From the IMG/VR virus record IMGVR_UViG_3300035070_002626, positions 186,001-250,000 of that record: a DNA stretch of 64,000 bases; one strand, written 5' to 3'. The notes under the pieces are model-generated. The model was given only the letters and a program-made list of their open reading frames with translations. It searched no databases and was not told the DNA's origin. Of the stretch, positions 55,371-59,148 are shown in pieces. The translations under genes were made by a program, and so were the position numbers. How positions within the stretch are numbered: position 1 is the first letter of the stretch; each line of letters begins with the position of its first letter.

Positions 55371-55954
55371 AGTGGACCTCTAGCAGTATTTACCTTCTCT
55401 AGAAACTTGCCCATAGACATTATCCTCATATTTTGTATTTTATTAAACCTAGGCACAAATGCTGATTCTGGACCTTCTATTCTCCAGAATTGCCTGGTGC
55501 TAAAGTCCTCAGTAAGCTTGATGATTTGATTAATCCAGTTACCCGGGTATGTTGGTGGGTCGAGATCTTTTTTGTAAAATTTTGTATTTGTATAGATATT
55601 GTTAACCATACCGTTGGTAGTCCCAAGATCCATGCCAATTAAGTATATGTCACTGTGGCCGTCAATTAACGCTAAACTAGCAGCATTTGGGCCACTGCTA
55701 AATCCTTTGTAGTCTTTAGCAAGAAACCGACCACCTAAATCCACGATAGGTTTTCGGGTGTGGAATCTATGTTTTTTTGCATATCCAGAATTTTGTATTT
55801 CTTCAGCAATTGGCCTATCAGTGGCTACCAAGCAATGAGGTGTGCACTCTTGATACAATCTATTGCATCCAAATACTGTACCAATTTCCATCAATTTACT
55901 AGGATTAACTGCTAGCCTGCTTTTGCCGTTTCCTAGTATAAATGCTGCACTCAT
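55367..55954 (-). CDS. Maf/DUF115 (MptE-like) Rossmann-fold protein
   Basis: AFILGNGKSR, VFGCNRLY, LVATD, SSGPNA, IYLIGMDL. Confidence 0.55.
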   Translation of the reverse strand: MSAAFILGNGKSRLAVNPSKLMEIGTVFGCNRLYQECTPHCLVATDRPIAEEIQNSGYAKKHRFHTRKPIVDLGGRFLAKDYKGFSSGPNAASLALIDGHSDIYLIGMDLGTTNGMVNNIYTNTKFYKKDLDPPTYPGNWINQIIKLTEDFSTRQFWRIEGPESAFVPRFNKIQNMRIMSMGKFLEKVNTARGPL

Positions 55955-55987
55955 AAAAAACCCCCATTGTAGTTATTACAATGAGGG
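55955..55987 (-). terminator. Terminator-like hairpin whose U6 tract abuts the next ATG
   Basis: CCCTCATTGTA-ATAAC-TACAATGGGGG-TTTTTT-ATG (stem contains one G-U pair). Confidence 0.7.
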
Positions 55988-56009
55988 CTAGCAAGTTAAA
56001 AAATTAATC

Positions 56010-56660
56010 TTAACCGTATTGTGGGTTCTCAATCTGTACTAGATTAATAGTTGTTGTTGATCCTTCGGCACCTGATTTTTCAATTGTGTCATCAAGAACA
56101 TTAAAGTAGTTAACCAATACTTTTGCGTTAGCAAAGTTGATTGCATACTTGTTAGTCATACGCTTGATACGCACTAGAGAAGAACCTTCGTCAGCATAAG
56201 TTACTGTCATAGTATTAGCTGTTAATGCTGCATCAGCTAAATCAGCTAGTACACAAACACCGATTGTATCTGCTGTGCCTGTACCTGCACCTACACCGGT
56301 TGCTTTAAATGTACTACCAACGCCTGCATCTGGGCCTGCACCAATTGATTGCCAGTCAGTATTGCCAAGTGCTGTAATGATGTATAGATTGTCAACAATA
56401 AACGAACCAGCTGTAACGCCAGTCGAATCGCCAACTAGGTATTTTGTTGAACCTTTTTGACGAATAATATAGCCGTCTGCTTCAGCAACTGTGCCGATTT
56501 TAACACGACATGTTGTTGTTGGAAACTCTCCACTTGATAGATTTGAATTACCGCCAACTTGACCGAAGTATAGCTCGCCTGCTGGTGTACCATTTCCGTC
56601 TGGATTGTTAAAGCCAGCGTCTCTAGTATCAGAAATTTTAATTTTGAGAGGACGTCCCAT
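56010..56660 (-). CDS. Probable virion structural protein
   Basis: 216 aa, MGRPLKI...; own late promoter (56750-55) and AAGGAG SD; first gene after the capsid gene. Confidence 0.65.
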   Translation of the reverse strand: MGRPLKIKISDTRDAGFNNPDGNGTPAGELYFGQVGGNSNLSSGEFPTTTCRVKIGTVAEADGYIIRQKGSTKYLVGDSTGVTAGSFIVDNLYIITALGNTDWQSIGAGPDAGVGSTFKATGVGAGTGTADTIGVCVLADLADAALTANTMTVTYADEGSSLVRIKRMTNKYAINFANAKVLVNYFNVLDDTIEKSGAEGSTTTINLVQIENPQYG

Positions 56661-56668
56661 GTTGTTTT

Positions 56669-56755
56669 CTCCTTGTAGAAGTCCGATGTAGGTTCTAGCC
56701 TACTACGCGGATGGTGTTCCGCATAAAACGCAGTATTACGTTAGAAAAGTATTTA
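56669..56755 (-). promoter_or_regulatory. Late promoter plus structured leader with a candidate H-type pseudoknot next to the SD
   Basis: Stems 56727-30/56739-42, 56707-11/56718-22, 56688-92/56699-703; loop 56693-97 complementary to 56676-80. Confidence 0.55.
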
Positions 56756-56758
56756 GCC

Positions 56759-56787
56759 AAAAAAACAGCACCCGAAGGTGCTGTTTT
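56759..56787 (-). terminator. Rho-independent terminator of the major capsid gene, cUUCGg loop
   Basis: AAAACAGCACC-TTCG-GGTGCTGTTTT followed by further Us. Confidence 0.92.
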
Positions 56788-56823
56788 CTCTTCCCTGCAT
56801 AATACAGGTTGTAATGATAAAGC

Positions 56824-58035
56824 TTATGAGAACGAAAGGTTCTGTACAGCAATTTCACCAACATAGTCACCGGCGTTGCCGAAGGACGATGCTGTGTTTG
56901 TTAGCTCAATATAGCCATAACGTGTCATAAAGGACACTACTGGCTCAAAGCTGGACGGATCAAGAACAACGCCTGAACTCATTAGCGGTACGTATGGGCA
57001 ATAGAACGCTGGTGCGTCTGTTTCACTTGCGCCTTTGTAGCCAACTAGTACTGGAGTTGTGTCGCCTGCGTATGAGTCACAGAATACACGCATTGTGCCA
57101 TTCAATGTACCAACGAATTTAGTATTTGTTGGTGCTTCAAATGTGCCTTCTGTTGTGCGAGCAAATGCACTTGTTGTTGCACTCTGTAGCACTGTAAGTG
57201 CAGCAGGGGAAACAACAGCATAGTTGCCTGCGCCACGACGTGTACGCTGAGCGATCAAGTTAGCTGTGCGGTTGATTAGAACTGCAAGAGCTGCATGCTC
57301 GTCACCAACAAATGTTGCTGTACCTGATACTGTGGCTTGGTTGTATGTAAACTCAGTTGCTGCTAGCGAACGTAGAGAAAGTAGAATCTCTTGGTCGATT
57401 TCAGCAGTAATCTCTTGAGCAAGTGCTGCCATGATTTCAGCTTCAACGTCAATGCCGTGCATGGCTTGTGCGTCTTGTGCTGCTTCAAAAGTCCAGCGAG
57501 CTTGTAGCTTACGTGTTTTTGCTTCAACAGCTTGCTTGAGGATTTGTACGGAAATCTGACGACCGCCGGAACCTTCAAGTACTGCTGTGTTTGCACCTTG
57601 GTATGTGTTCTGTGCATTTTGTACAACGCCTGCTGTCACTGTGGACGCAGAGGAGTAAGCTTGTGCAATTTTAAATGGTGATAGAGCTTCGTCACCAGCG
57701 GCTGTACTTGTTGCGGCTGCTGAGTTATCTGTCATTGCGTTTGCATAACGAACACGTAGTGTGTGGATTTGGCCAACTGGACCAGTCATTGGCTGAACGC
57801 CGACTAGTTCGTTAGCAATAACAGTTGGCATAACACGTCTGATAACTGGTAGGATAACACGGTTAAGTGTTGCTACGTTACCGGAAGAAGTTGAACCTGC
57901 TGTTGCGTTCTCTGCCAAGTGCTTGCGAGTGTTTTCTAGGATAACACCCATTGTTGAACGGCGTGAACCTTGAAGGCCTTCTAGGAGGGCTTCCTTGGTC
58001 TCACTCCATCTGTTTTCTAGTAGTTCTTGTGACAT
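56824..58035 (-). CDS. gp23: Major capsid protein
   Basis: RRVMP..IA.ELVGVQPMTGP.GQI..LR, VEAKTRKLQARWTFE.AQD, EIDQEI, FYCPYVPL, FMTRYG. Confidence 0.96.
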   Translation of the reverse strand: MSQELLENRWSETKEALLEGLQGSRRSTMGVILENTRKHLAENATAGSTSSGNVATLNRVILPVIRRVMPTVIANELVGVQPMTGPVGQIHTLRVRYANAMTDNSAAATSTAAGDEALSPFKIAQAYSSASTVTAGVVQNAQNTYQGANTAVLEGSGGRQISVQILKQAVEAKTRKLQARWTFEAAQDAQAMHGIDVEAEIMAALAQEITAEIDQEILLSLRSLAATEFTYNQATVSGTATFVGDEHAALAVLINRTANLIAQRTRRGAGNYAVVSPAALTVLQSATTSAFARTTEGTFEAPTNTKFVGTLNGTMRVFCDSYAGDTTPVLVGYKGASETDAPAFYCPYVPLMSSGVVLDPSSFEPVVSFMTRYGYIELTNTASSFGNAGDYVGEIAVQNLSFS

Positions 58036-58056
58036 TTCTGTCTCCTTTTTCTTTTT

Positions 58057-59148
58057 TTAAAGCCCTGCTAGGCGCTTAAGATCGATAACGTTATTAGCGT
58101 CATTTGTTTGTGATCTTTGTTGTTCGGCCTTAACAGTTTTGTTACCAGTAGATTCAACAAGTGCTTCAGCTTTTTTAGTTGCTTTAGCTTCACTGAGTAC
58201 TGCTGGCAAATACTTCTCAAATGCGTTCTTTAGACGAGATGTTTGAACGTTTTCAAGAAGATTAATCATTACTTCTCTCTTTTGATCGTTAAGAGGAGAT
58301 AGTAGTTCGTCTAATGTAGCTTCCCGCTCATTAGCTTCACGAATGATTTTAATTTCATGATTTTTGCTCTCAACAAGCTTTGCGGCTTGTTTTTGAGCAG
58401 TAACGGCTTCTGCCAACTTAATATCTTTATCTTCAATAGTAGCTAATAGCTTGCGTACTTCTGCATTCTCATTGAGATGCGTGGCACCAAACTCTGTAGC
58501 ATATGCTTCAAATATACGGCGACCAAAATTGTTCTCACGAGCAACCTTGATATCCTCTTTAAGTTGACTTAGTTCTTGCGTAAGATGAGTAGCAACAGTT
58601 GTTGACATCTTTTTAGCAGATTCTTTTACAAATTTACTTTTTAGACTATCAAGTTGTCCACGTGCTTCGCTGACAAGTTTTACTTTAGTTTCAACTAAGT
58701 CTTTCTTGTCTGCTGCGAATTCCTTGATTTCTTCGGCCAAAGCACTTACAATAAAAGATTCTAGCTTACCAAAACCTTCTGCTTGTACTTTGCGATCTGT
58801 GCGTAGTTCGCGAAGCTCTTCGGAAAGTTTTGATACCATAAAGTTATTAAATTTATTAGCATTTTCTTTCATTGCTTTTGCGGCTTTTACACGGTCCTCT
58901 GCAAGCGCCTTTTTCTCTTCGTTAAGTTGAGCAATTTCTTCTTGCAGGCCTTCTGTTACCATTTTATCTAGGGCTTCTACCATCACTGTTTTATCATGAT
59001 CATAGCGTTGTGCAAACTCCTCACGAAGTTCTGCACGAACTGTTTCTTTGGTCTCATTCAACTTTGCTGCCCATTGTTCAGCAATAGCATTACGAGTATC
59101 CTCATTAACCAGGTCGCTATCTAGTAGTGGTTTAATAGCATCTAACAT
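58057..59148 (-). CDS. gp22: Prohead core scaffolding protein
   Basis: Long E/K/A-rich coiled coil between protease and capsid genes; ENNFGRRIFEA. Confidence 0.8.
   Translation of the reverse strand: MLDAIKPLLDSDLVNEDTRNAIAEQWAAKLNETKETVRAELREEFAQRYDHDKTVMVEALDKMVTEGLQEEIAQLNEEKKALAEDRVKAAKAMKENANKFNNFMVSKLSEELRELRTDRKVQAEGFGKLESFIVSALAEEIKEFAADKKDLVETKVKLVSEARGQLDSLKSKFVKESAKKMSTTVATHLTQELSQLKEDIKVARENNFGRRIFEAYATEFGATHLNENAEVRKLLATIEDKDIKLAEAVTAQKQAAKLVESKNHEIKIIREANEREATLDELLSPLNDQKREVMINLLENVQTSRLKNAFEKYLPAVLSEAKATKKAEALVESTGNKTVKAEQQRSQTNDANNVIDLKRLAGL

What the first reader, a model, noticed from the sequence alone, without database searches (positions are those of the whole stretch)
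56661..56755. Candidate H-type pseudoknot 1 nt upstream of a Shine-Dalgarno in a late leader
Seen on the mRNA after TAAATA: hairpin AACG/CGUU, hairpin GCGGA/UCCGC, then S1 GUAGG/CCUAC with loop C-UAGAA, a 7-nt linker, UUCUA (complementary to the loop, giving a 5-bp S2), C, and AAGGAG. The geometry (L1=1, S1=5, S2=5, L3=7) is that of a classical H-type pseudoknot. Inference: a translational operator or ligand/protein-responsive switch controlling the first gene after the capsid terminator.
Basis: partly seen in the sequence, partly recalled or inferred. Interest (0 to 1): 0.6.

Follow-up and report, generated by a model that had tools for sequence, protein, structure and literature searches.

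The report
Known phage leader RNA, different pseudoknot
The flagged stretch is a copy of the orphan "freshwater-2" RNA motif, sitting at the front of a late phage message just after the capsid gene; the proposed pseudoknot is not kept in relatives, but a different one that covers the start codon is.

Summary
The element is a full-length member of Rfam RF02980 (freshwater-2, cis-regulatory; 62.3 bits, cut-off 49.9). It lies in a 300-kb phage with a T4-type capsid gene. The order is capsid gene, terminator, late-promoter-like TAAATA, three hairpins (P1, P2, P3), SD, then a 216-aa protein of unknown fold.

About 300 related leaders were collected. P1-P3 covary strongly. The proposed S2 pairing (P3 loop UAGAA with linker UUCUA) does not:
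- No compensatory change was seen.
- 14 loop G-to-A variants and 30 linker CU[C/A]CU variants all leave mismatches.
- Half of the family lacks that linker yet keeps the loop.

The 3' side of the P2 loop, (C)CCA, is complementary to UGG(G) of AUG-GGN. When codon 2 is GCN, the loop carries GCC (10 of 23 leaders against 0 of 187, at least five lineages).

My best reading is an H-type pseudoknot of P2 with the start codon that controls translation of the gene after the capsid. The ligand or partner is unknown.

The parts
56824..58035 (-). Major capsid protein gene (403 aa, Gp23 family), the gene upstream of the leader
   Evidence: Pfam PF07068 E 3.6e-99. phrog_138 major head protein E 4.5e-103. 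The nearest cultured relatives are jumbo myoviruses: Phosso, fHe-Yen9-04, PA5oct, RaK2 and Atu_ph07.
56759..56790 (-). Intrinsic-terminator-like hairpin after the capsid gene (14 bp, UUCG loop, U-run)
   Evidence: MFE fold. Weak matches to the terminator parts of sRNA models.
56750..56755 (-). TAAATA, a T4-type late-promoter-like -10 word
   Evidence: Present within 50 nt upstream of P2 in 151 of 152 related leaders. 13 of the 41 TAAATA words in the window lie in the 3.6% non-coding DNA just before genes. Its role as a promoter is inferred, not shown.
56658..56743 (-). Rfam RF02980 freshwater-2 match, model positions 1-84 of 84
   Evidence: 62.3 bits against gathering score 49.9. It is the only hit over the cut-off in the 299,910-bp genome.
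56727..56742 (-). P1 hairpin (AACGU / GCGUU), predicted to lie at or near the 5' end of the late transcript
   Evidence: Four of its five pairs show changes on both sides in 74 leaders.
56704..56725 (-). P2 hairpin (UAUGCGG / CCGCGUA, loop AACACCAU), with an invariant U.G wobble
   Evidence: 100% of cells paired. Pair 7-25 is GC 56, AU 17, UA 16. The outer pairs were fixed by my search pattern for part of the sample.
56711..56714 (-). CCAU at the 3' side of the P2 loop: proposed 5' strand of the start-codon pseudoknot
   Evidence: Complementary to A56660-G57 (AUGG). CC lies 0-2 nt from the P2 3' strand in 170 of 193 leaders. It covaries with codon 2.
56688..56703 (-). P3 hairpin (GUAGG / CCUAC) with conserved loop C-UAGAA-(C), 56693-56698
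   Evidence: All four consensus pairs covary. The loop is CUAGAAC in 103 of 152 instances parsed as a 7-nt loop, and in 16 more parsed as CUAGAA because the last C pairs, as in the window. The only common variant is G to A.
56675..56687 (-). CUUCU (56677-56681) is also an anti-SD-like word.
   Evidence: S2 is not kept. CUUCU:AGGAG is pairable in 74 of 74, and the only change is U.G to C-G. The hairpin is worth -2.2 kcal/mol here.
56669..56674 (-). Shine-Dalgarno AAGGAG, followed by the spacer AAAACAAC
   Evidence: Invariant in the family. The same SD and spacer type occurs on other late leaders of this genome.
56657..56660 (-). AUGG: start codon plus the first base of codon 2, proposed 3' strand of the pseudoknot
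   Evidence: G+4 is invariant (no ATGH leader in IMG/VR).
56010..56660 (-). Regulated gene: a 216-aa all-beta protein of unknown function, with conserved N-terminus MGRP(L/I)K
   Evidence: No Pfam or PHROG match. AF2 model pLDDT 85.7. No convincing fold match. No homologue in 50,697 phage records. A capsid gene lies upstream on the same strand in 144 of 175 testable loci.
55959..55989 (-). Terminator-like hairpin after the regulated gene
   Evidence: Consensus scan: 13 pairs followed by a T-run.

Best explanation
The stretch is a member of the freshwater-2 RNA family (Rfam RF02980). Here it can be placed for the first time in a genome context. It is the 5' leader of a late transcript of a roughly 300-kb phage with a T4-type capsid gene. 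The transcript would start a few bases after a TAAATA late-promoter word that follows the capsid-gene terminator. The leader precedes a conserved head-module gene of unknown function.

The leader folds into three hairpins. P1 is variable in sequence and 5'-terminal. P2 has an invariant stem sequence. P3 has the invariant loop CUAGAAC.

The 3' part of the P2 loop, (C)CCA, pairs with UGG(G) of the start region AUG-GGN. This gives an H-type pseudoknot: S1 is P2, S2 is 3-6 bp, and L3 holds P3, the linker and the SD. The pseudoknot buries the start codon.

I infer that this fold sets or switches translation initiation of the gene after the capsid. I also infer that the invariant P2 stem and P3 loop nucleotides are contacts for a tertiary fold or an unknown trans factor.

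Shown: family membership, P1-P3 covariation, synteny, promoter-word conservation, and loop/start covariation.
Inferred: transcription start, pseudoknot formation in vivo, repression, and any ligand.

For: Membership: 62.3 bits, full length.

Context:
- Capsid gene and terminator upstream.
- Capsid homologue upstream in 144 of 175 loci.
- TAAATA in 151 of 152 leaders, enriched before genes in the window.

Hairpins: 100% paired P2 and P3, with many double changes.

Pseudoknot of the P2 loop with the start codon:
- CC lies 0-2 nt from the P2 3' strand in 170 of 193 leaders.
- At least 4 Watson-Crick bp to the start region occur in 102 of 193 leaders, against 34 +/- 5 (maximum 48) with shuffled loops.
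- GCC occurs in the loop in 10 of 23 GCN-start leaders against 0 of 187 GGN-start leaders, Fisher p 3e-11 uncorrected for descent.
- The GCN lineages have different nearest GGN relatives. Five of them carry the complementary change: L021, L139, L191, L341 and L393/L406. In L393 two adjacent pairs change, UCC:GGA to AGC:GCU.
- Swap test: 8 of 16 GCN combinations fit their own start better and 2 fit worse; 69 of 107 GGN combinations fit their own start better and 0 fit worse.
- Tool counts on A3: pair 20-84 is CG 54 and GC 4; pair 19-85 is UA 13 and AU 11.
- 19 of the 29 leaders without CC in the P2 loop belong to one subgroup that instead has a strong SD-masking hairpin, CUCCU(N4)AGGAG.
Against: - The pseudoknot hypothesis was found in the same data that support it.
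- Its register slides by one base between lineages, so column counts show only 58-66% paired cells.
- In the window alone, the 4-bp match is reached by 13% of shuffled loops.
- Four GCN lineages are not compensated (L154/L362, L199, L355, L382), and 29 leaders lack CC.
- S2 is short (3-6 bp) and L3 is long, so stability is marginal without help.
- No pseudoknot-aware folding and no probing data were available.
- The RNA-library contigs cannot show a transcript start.
- No regulator or ligand is known. The regulated protein has no known function, and no cultured phage carries the element.
Confidence: 0.55

Rival explanations
1. The P3 loop UAGAA pairs with linker UUCUA to give a classical H-type pseudoknot just upstream of the SD, and this acts as the operator or switch.
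For: There is 5-bp Watson-Crick complementarity in the window, with plausible geometry (L1 1, S1 5, S2 5, L3 7). A 4-bp AGAA:UUCU potential is present in 62 of 74 type-A leaders. At least 4 bp occur in 44 of 52 type-A combinations against 32 +/- 3 after shuffling. From memory, the loop CUAG fits a YUNR U-turn word.
Against: No compensatory change exists anywhere. There are 12 disruptive cells in the core, and the fifth pair is present in 29 of 74. 14 distinct YUAAAAC loops all sit with CUUCU. 30 distinct CU[C/A]CU linkers all sit with loop A. No CUU[AGU]U or C[ACG]UCU linker exists in IMG/VR. Type B lacks the linker but keeps the loop, with 22 of 65 against 18 +/- 2.5 expected by chance. The duplex is worth only -3.0 kcal/mol.
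Confidence: 0.12
2. SD masking. In type-A leaders the linker CUUCU (CUCCU in one subgroup) is an anti-SD that pairs with AGGAG in a small hairpin. It may compete with the SD-like P3 loop (AGAAC, or AGGAGAAC in the subgroup). This may act together with the P2/start pseudoknot.
For: CUUCU:AGGAG is pairable in 74 of 74 leaders, and the only change turns U.G into C-G. The hairpin is -2.2 kcal/mol in the window and is part of the local MFE of the type-A consensus. The CUCCU variants fold at about -14 to -15 kcal/mol together with P3, with the SD masked. The mean probability that GGAG is unpaired is 0.43 in type A against 0.64 in type B.
Against: The SD is invariant, so no two-sided covariation is possible. 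Six CUACU variants put an A.G mismatch in the helix. Type B has no anti-SD (12+4 of 65 reach 4 bp or more, against 12.7 by chance). It is not part of the RNAalifold consensus. The hairpin is weak in most members.
Confidence: 0.25
3. No pseudoknot at all. The three hairpins are a 5'-terminal stabiliser against 5'-end-dependent decay, and/or a sequence-specific binding site for a phage or host protein. The P2-loop CCA is a protein contact.
For: P1 starts about 6-10 nt after TAAATA, so it would be 5'-terminal. Other late leaders of the genome also carry one 5' hairpin. The P2 stem sequence and the P3 loop are invariant beyond what pairing needs.
Against: It does not explain why the loop base next to CC changes to G exactly when +5 changes to C, in several lineages. 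It does not explain why three hairpins of this kind occur on one gene only.
Confidence: 0.22
4. A put-like RNA. The nascent promoter-proximal hairpins act on RNA polymerase to read through the terminator-like site after the gene (55959-55989).
For: The position is promoter-proximal, and a terminator-like site follows the gene. Homologues of the next gene follow in 104 of 146 loci.
Against: The element is fixed tightly to the SD and AUG; in type B the linker is only 0-8 nt. It covaries with the start region. No evidence was found for this function.
Confidence: 0.04

Closest known systems
Rfam RF02980, freshwater-2 RNA motif (Weinberg et al. 2017, Nucleic Acids Res 45:10811, PMC5737381)
   Same: Full-length match above the gathering score. 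It has the same three hairpins, conserved P2 stem, P3 loop CUAGAAC, SD and AUG. It is upstream of a protein with no known domain.
   Different: Here the motif has a genome context: a 300-kb phage with a T4-type capsid gene, the head module, a late-promoter word, and marine samples. The Rfam model ends at AUG and shows no pairing of the P2 loop with the start region. I could not read the paper's supplement or the seed alignment, so I cannot say whether the authors noted such a pairing.
Translational operators that are pseudoknots involving the ribosome binding site: E. coli rpsO (S15) and alpha-operon (S4) leaders (from knowledge of the literature)
   Same: In those cases a hairpin loop pairs with sequence at the start codon, so that the SD and AUG lie within an H-type pseudoknot upstream of the regulated gene.
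   Different: They are bound by the encoded ribosomal protein. Here no binding protein is known, S2 is shorter, and L3 contains a further conserved hairpin (P3). Membership cannot be claimed.
Phage T4 gene 32 leader pseudoknot (from knowledge of the literature)
   Same: It is a phage mRNA leader with an H-type pseudoknot used for autogenous translational control.
   Different: From memory, the T4 pseudoknot lies well upstream of the start codon and nucleates cooperative gp32 binding. Here the supported pairing includes the start codon itself. No sequence similarity was found, and no Rfam hit other than freshwater-2.
SD-sequestering hairpins of riboswitch expression platforms and RNA thermometers
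   Same: Type-A leaders, and above all the CUCCU subgroup, can mask GGAG in a short hairpin.
   Different: This is absent from half of the family. No aptamer-type ligand pocket or temperature dependence has been shown.

Membership tests
Rfam RF02980 freshwater-2 | Covariance-model score at or above the curated gathering score (49.9 bits) | tested here: met
   62.3 bits, E 4.4e-07 over 64 kb, model 1-84 of 84.
Rfam RF02980 freshwater-2 | Three consecutive hairpins followed by an unpaired tract with SD and AUG, upstream of a protein-coding gene | tested here: met
   cmscan alignment, MFE fold, pair counts, ORF 56010-56660.
Rfam RF02980 freshwater-2 | Occurrence in freshwater metagenomes only, with no classified organism (as I recall the family description) | tested here: not met
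   This copy is held by marine and seawater runs of 17 studies and lies in a phage genome. This is a description of where the motif was found, not a structural criterion, so it does not affect membership.
   UAGAA:UUCUA, L1 1 nt, L3 7 nt in the window. Chance is about 2-3%.
   0 compensatory and 12 disruptive cells. 14 and 30 further uncompensated variants. Absent in type B.
H-type pseudoknot of the P2 loop with the start codon (proposed here) | The pairing is maintained in relatives, with compensatory changes | tested here: inconclusive
   Support: GCC loops occur only with GCN starts (10 of 23 against 0 of 187), in five lineages, with a double change in L393. Against: four uncompensated lineages, a sliding register, and a post-hoc test.
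H-type pseudoknot of the P2 loop with the start codon (proposed here) | Physical formation of S2 (probing, structure) | not testable with these tools
   No pseudoknot-aware folding or probing data were available.
Autogenous translational operator (rpsO, gene 32 type) | Specific binding of a regulatory protein to the leader, with repression of translation | not testable with these tools
   No candidate binder was identified. The product of the regulated gene has no recognisable RNA-binding fold; the best match is Z 4.0, small SH3/Tudor-like barrels.
T4-type late promoter (TATAAATA) | A conserved -10-like word at a fixed short distance upstream of the transcript start of late genes | tested here: inconclusive
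   TAAATA is kept in 151 of 152 leaders and enriched in front of genes. The transcript start was not mapped, because the RNA data are contigs only. The presence of a gp55-type sigma factor in the genome was not tested.

The most novel reading that the evidence does not exclude
The orphan freshwater-2 motif is a translational operator of phages with T4-type capsid genes, including jumbo phages. Its core is a pseudoknot between the P2 loop and the start codon of a head-module gene. The invariant P2 stem and P3 loop form the docking site for a trans factor, possibly the unassembled gene product or a phage late regulator. This would couple synthesis of that protein to head assembly. One sub-lineage has replaced start-codon masking by SD masking.
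Probability: 0.3. Interest if true: 0.65.

Novelty: new member of a known kind. Interest (0 to 1): 0.5.

Why it matters
As far as I can find, freshwater-2 has been an orphan motif since 2017. No organism, no function and no informative neighbour gene were known, and no later paper mentions it.

This window and about 300 related loci tie it to one setting: the late leader of a conserved gene in the head module, downstream of a T4-type capsid gene, in uncultured aquatic phages of up to 300 kb or more.

That gives three things:
- a concrete, testable mechanism, namely start-codon masking by a loop/start pseudoknot;
- a natural set of variants for testing it: type A, type B and the CUCCU subgroup;
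- a cheap marker for head modules in phage contigs.

It also shows that the pairing that looks most obvious in a single sequence is not the one that evolution keeps.

Tried and rejected
1. uORF. The conserved AUG inside P2 and the stop-like P3 loop triplet (UAG, UAA or UGA) are in frame in the window (9 codons). The frame is not kept in the family (0:87, 1:38, 2:61). Rejected.

2. Linker GGAC pairing with GUCC of codons 3-4, as in the MFE fold. More than 20 type-A leaders use AGACC and have no partner. Rejected.

3. Mutual-information scan of linker and loop columns. The only strong signal links linker U-to-C with loop C-to-G. It belongs to one related group and is not an antiparallel pair. 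Not evidence.

4. Cultured relatives (Phosso, Atu_ph07, Vibrio phage 2.275.O). They have no freshwater-2 hit and no homologue of the 216-aa protein after the capsid gene. There is no tblastn hit in 50,697 phage records.

5. Function of the 216-aa protein. Pfam, PHROGs, a PDB profile search, Foldseek against PDB, VIA wide, BFVD and the ESM Atlas (by features and by shape) gave only uncharacterised viral proteins or Z 4 or less.

6. RNA evidence. Six metatranscriptome runs hold parts of the stretch, but only as contigs, and one contig spans the terminator and leader. There is no transcript start and no proof of transcription.

7. Paper supplement. Not held, so the original description could not be read.

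8. Search for leaders with a second codon not starting with G. None exist, so that pseudoknot pair cannot be tested by natural variation.

9. Host. Only two real hits in 185,579 species genomes, both on short contigs of MAGs, one labelled Candidatus Pelagibacter. This is a hint only.

Full report
**What is there.** The genes of this part of the window are on the minus strand. Read on that strand, the order is as follows:
- a 403-aa gene, 58035-56824;
- a 14-bp hairpin with a UUCG loop and a U-run, 56790-56759;
- TAAATA, 56755-56750;
- three hairpins;
- a 13-nt linker;
- AAGGAG, 56674-56669;
- an A-rich spacer;
- AUG at 56660, opening a 216-aa gene, 56660-56010.

The 403-aa protein is a Gp23-type major capsid protein (Pfam E 3.6e-99; phrog_138). 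So "first gene after the capsid terminator" is right.

**What it is.** A scan of the whole window against Rfam gives one hit over threshold. It is RF02980, freshwater-2 RNA, type Cis-reg, at 56658-56743 on the minus strand, with 62.3 bits (gathering score 49.9) and the full model 1-84. The model consists of three hairpins followed by an unpaired tract that ends in AAGGAGAAAAcA-AAUG:
- P1;
- P2, with the conserved stem UAUGCgG/CcGCGUA;
- P3, with the loop cUAGAAC.

The motif comes from Weinberg et al. 2017 (PMC5737381). The main text does not discuss it, and the supplement is not held. No other paper in the library mentions it.

The window is part of a 299,910-bp virus record, estimated 86% complete, and this is the only hit over the cut-off in it. 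The nearest cultured capsid genes belong to jumbo myoviruses: Phosso, fHe-Yen9-04, PA5oct, RaK2 and Atu_ph07.

**Related leaders.** Three kinds of search gave about 300 distinct leaders:
- a protein-based search with the 216-aa product, 80 loci;
- pattern searches that fix only parts of P2 and the SD;
- targeted variant searches.

Four points follow.
- The leader always precedes a homologue of the same protein (N-terminus MGRP(L/I)K).
- A capsid-gene homologue lies upstream on the same strand in 144 of 175 testable loci, 85 nt to about 2.4 kb away in all but one locus (4.4 kb).
- TAAATA occurs within 50 nt upstream of P2 in 151 of 152 leaders.
- In the window, 13 of 41 TAAATA words lie in the 3.6% non-coding DNA, mostly 10-42 nt before a gene start. 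The one at 56755 has an unusually long 95-nt leader.

TATAAATA is the T4 late promoter (established knowledge). The promoter role here is an inference, because the transcript start could not be mapped. Other late leaders of the same genome have TATAAATA or CTAAATA, a single 5' hairpin and AAAGGAGAAAYAAAAUG. The SD and spacer of the Rfam model are therefore generic for this phage's late genes, and the specific part is P1-P3.

**Two subtypes.** Type A has the linker AUYGGRCUUCUNN before the SD. The window belongs to it, and it has 75 distinct leaders. Type B (71 distinct leaders) has a short linker of 0-14 nt without that word, mostly 3-8 nt. Both types keep the P2 stem sequence and the P3 loop. 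The loop is CUAGAAC in 103 of 152 instances parsed as a 7-nt loop, plus 16 parsed as CUAGAA because the last C pairs, as in the window. The only common variant is G to A.

**The hairpins are real.**
- On 74 type-A leaders (alignment A1), P2 and P3 are 100% paired.
- All four P3 pairs and four of five P1 pairs show changes on both sides.
- On 89 leaders of both types (A3), the result is the same.
- The outer P2 pairs were fixed by my patterns for part of the sample, but they are also invariant in the protein-based sample.

The complementarity exists in the window. It is reached by 2.9% of shuffled linkers. In the family it is not maintained.
- In A1 the pair A-U 67-80 never varies.
- Pair 66-81 is broken in 7 leaders (CUCCU).
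- Pair 65-82 is broken in 5 leaders (loop G to A).
- The fifth pair, 63-86, exists in only 29 of 74.
- There is no compensatory change in the core.

Targeted searches sharpen this.
- 14 distinct type-A leaders with loop YUAAAAC, in different P2/P3 backgrounds, all keep CUUCU.
- No leader with CUU[AGU]U or C[ACG]UCU exists in IMG/VR.
- 30 distinct leaders with CUCCU or CUACU all keep the loop A that would have to change.
- In type B the loop is conserved although there is nothing for it to pair with. At least 4 bp occur in 22 of 65, against 18 +/- 2.5 by chance.

It cannot be excluded as a weak, lineage-specific contact.

**What the linker may do instead.** CUUCU is also complementary to AGGAG (C-G, U-A, U.G, C-G, U-A).
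- This pairing is possible in 74 of 74 type-A leaders, and the only change (U to C) improves it.
- The hairpin is worth -2.2 kcal/mol in the window and is in the local MFE of the type-A consensus.
- In the CUCCU subgroup, the MFE fold of the P3-to-AUG segment is about -14 to -15 kcal/mol and masks the SD.
- The SD is invariant, so no covariation can exist. CUACU variants break the pairing, and type B lacks it.

I keep SD masking as a partial, non-exclusive rival.

**A different pseudoknot.** The 3' side of the P2 loop carries CC, usually CCCA or CCA, 0-2 nt from the P2 3' strand in 170 of 193 distinct leaders. It is complementary to U+2 G+3 G+4 (G+5) of the start region AUG-GGN. In the window, C56714-U56711 (CCAU) can pair with A56660-G56657 (AUGG).

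At least 4 Watson-Crick bp occur in 102 of 193 leaders, against 34 +/- 5 (maximum 48) when the loop letters are shuffled.

The decisive observation is covariation with codon 2.
- Of 210 distinct leaders, 187 start AUG-GGN and none has GCC in the P2 loop.
- 23 start AUG-GCN, and 10 of these have GCC. A further 4 of the 5 GCU starts have AGC.
- The GCN lineages have different nearest GGN relatives by protein similarity.

Loop and start sequences in the GCN lineages and in their nearest GGN relatives:

| GCN lineage | Loop : start in that lineage | Loop in nearest GGN relative |
|---|---|---|
| L021 clade | UUGCCA:UGGCAA | CACCCA |
| L139/L367/L422/L456 | GCCA:UGGC | (distant relative only) |
| L341 | GCCA | UUACCCA |
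| L191 (type A) | GCC | CCC |
| L393/L406 | AGC:GCU | AAAUCCAA (UCC:GGA), two adjacent double changes |

Not compensated are L154/L362, L199, L355 and L382. Three very divergent leaders (L205, L451, L212) also lack the pairing.

In a swap test, 8 of 16 GCN loop/start combinations fit their own start better than GGA, and 2 fit worse. Of the GGN combinations, 69 of 107 fit their own start better than GCA, and none fits worse.

The tool counts on A3 show the same. In one register, pair 20-84 is CG 54 and GC 4, and pair 19-85 is UA 13 and AU 11. In the register one base over, pair 19-84 is CG 16, UG 10 and GC 4.

The geometry is that of a classical H-type pseudoknot:
- S1 is P2.
- L1 is the 5' part of the loop.
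- S2 is adjacent to the P2 3' strand.
- L3 is P3 plus linker, SD and spacer.

19 of the 29 leaders without CC in the P2 loop belong to the GGAGAAC/CUCCU subgroup, which has the strong SD-masking hairpin. This would make sense if both devices occlude the ribosome binding site. It may, however, reflect a single evolutionary event.

**Limits.**
- The P2-loop/start pairing was noticed in the same data that support it.
- Its register slides, so only 58-66% of cells pair in fixed columns.
- It is short, and in the window alone it is unremarkable (13% of shuffles).
- G+4 never varies.
- No pseudoknot-aware folding or probing was possible.
- Metatranscriptome runs hold the leader only as contigs, which show neither ends nor strand, and one contig spans the terminator and leader.

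**The regulated gene.** The 216-aa protein has no Pfam or PHROG family. A confident model (pLDDT 85.7, pTM 0.81) is all-beta.
- Foldseek against the PDB gives nothing (E above 0.3).
- VIA-align gives only small SH3/Tudor-like barrels at Z 4 or less.
- BFVD and the ESM Atlas give only uncharacterised viral proteins.
- There is no homologue in 50,697 deposited phage genomes.
- The closest cultured jumbo phages have neither the motif nor the gene after their capsid gene.

Its position suggests a head-associated protein, but that is inference only.

**Mechanism I commit to (confidence about 0.55 for the whole statement).** This is a late-transcript leader of the freshwater-2 family. Its P2 loop pairs with the start codon region, and this pseudoknot, together with the invariant P2 stem and P3 loop, governs translation initiation of the gene after the capsid.
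- Shown: membership, hairpins, synteny, promoter-word conservation, and loop/start covariation.
- Inferred: transcript start, formation in vivo, direction of the effect (repression), and the existence of a trans factor.

By analogy, drawn from the literature and not tested here, it works like the rpsO or alpha-operon operators, in which a loop/start pseudoknot encloses the ribosome binding site. It works less like the T4 gene 32 pseudoknot, which from memory lies well upstream of the start codon.

**Other ideas rejected.** A uORF from the conserved AUG in P2 to the stop-like P3 loop triplet is in frame in the window, but the frame is not kept. Pairing of linker GGAC with GUCC in codons 3-4 is not kept either.

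**Verdict.** The element is a new member of a known but uncharacterised RNA family.

Noticed in passing
window 55900-58100: Despite the family name 'freshwater-2', this phage stretch is held by seawater and marine metagenome runs of 17 studies, and in part by 6 metatranscriptome runs (contigs only).
   Followed up: partly
L582 (8.1-kb contig of a MAG labelled Candidatus Pelagibacter sp. TMED203) and L569 (1.4-kb contig of a MAG labelled uncultured Rhizobium): These are the only true leaders among 51 pattern hits in 185,579 species genomes. Both sit on short contigs of metagenome bins. The Pelagibacter bin is a weak hint at a host, not proof.
   Followed up: partly
L124:459-549 and L124:1641-1733: One viral contig carries two different copies of the leader about 1.2 kb apart, so it probably has two tandem paralogues of the regulated gene.
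   Followed up: no
window 56695-56724 (-): The conserved AUG inside P2 and the P3 loop triplet (UAG here; UAA or UGA in variants) form a 9-codon frame in the window. The frame is not conserved in the family (0:87, 1:38, 2:61), so there is no uORF.
   Followed up: yes
G000:C1:144379-144455 and 163756-163865 (outside the window; L082, L083): Other leaders of the same genome show TATAAATA or CTAAATA, one 5' hairpin and AAAGGAGAAAYAAAAUG. This looks like the generic late-gene leader of this phage, and it explains the weak sub-threshold freshwater-2 hits.
   Followed up: partly
window, e.g. 53930, 34683, 31430, 28065, 25359, 24817, 17360, 6516 (-) and 13977, 31484, 37248 (+): TAAATA words are concentrated in the few intergenic gaps, 10-42 nt before gene starts. 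13 of 41 lie in 3.6% of the DNA. They are candidate late promoters.
   Followed up: partly
window 56681-56687 (-) against 56654-56660 (-): The type-A linker AUCGGAC differs by one base from the start region AUGGGAC. This may be a remnant of a duplication or a decoy. It is unexplained.
   Followed up: no
L103, L119, L148, L193 and about 20 further loci: One subgroup has the P3 loop GGAGAAC (a copy of the SD word AGGAGAA), the linker CUCCU with a strong SD-masking hairpin, and an A-rich P2 loop without CC. It is a variant design of the same leader.
   Followed up: partly
window 58057-59148 (-): The 363-aa gene before the capsid gene (phrog_10922, unknown function) matches in position genes annotated 'Rad50 ATPase' in Phosso and Atu_ph07, and 'coil containing protein' in Vibrio phage 2.275.O. 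It is probably the scaffold protein, and the Rad50 label is doubtful.
   Followed up: no
window 55959-55989 (-): A strong terminator-like hairpin (13 pairs plus a T-run) lies directly after the 216-aa gene. The leader and gene may therefore form a monocistronic late unit.
   Followed up: no
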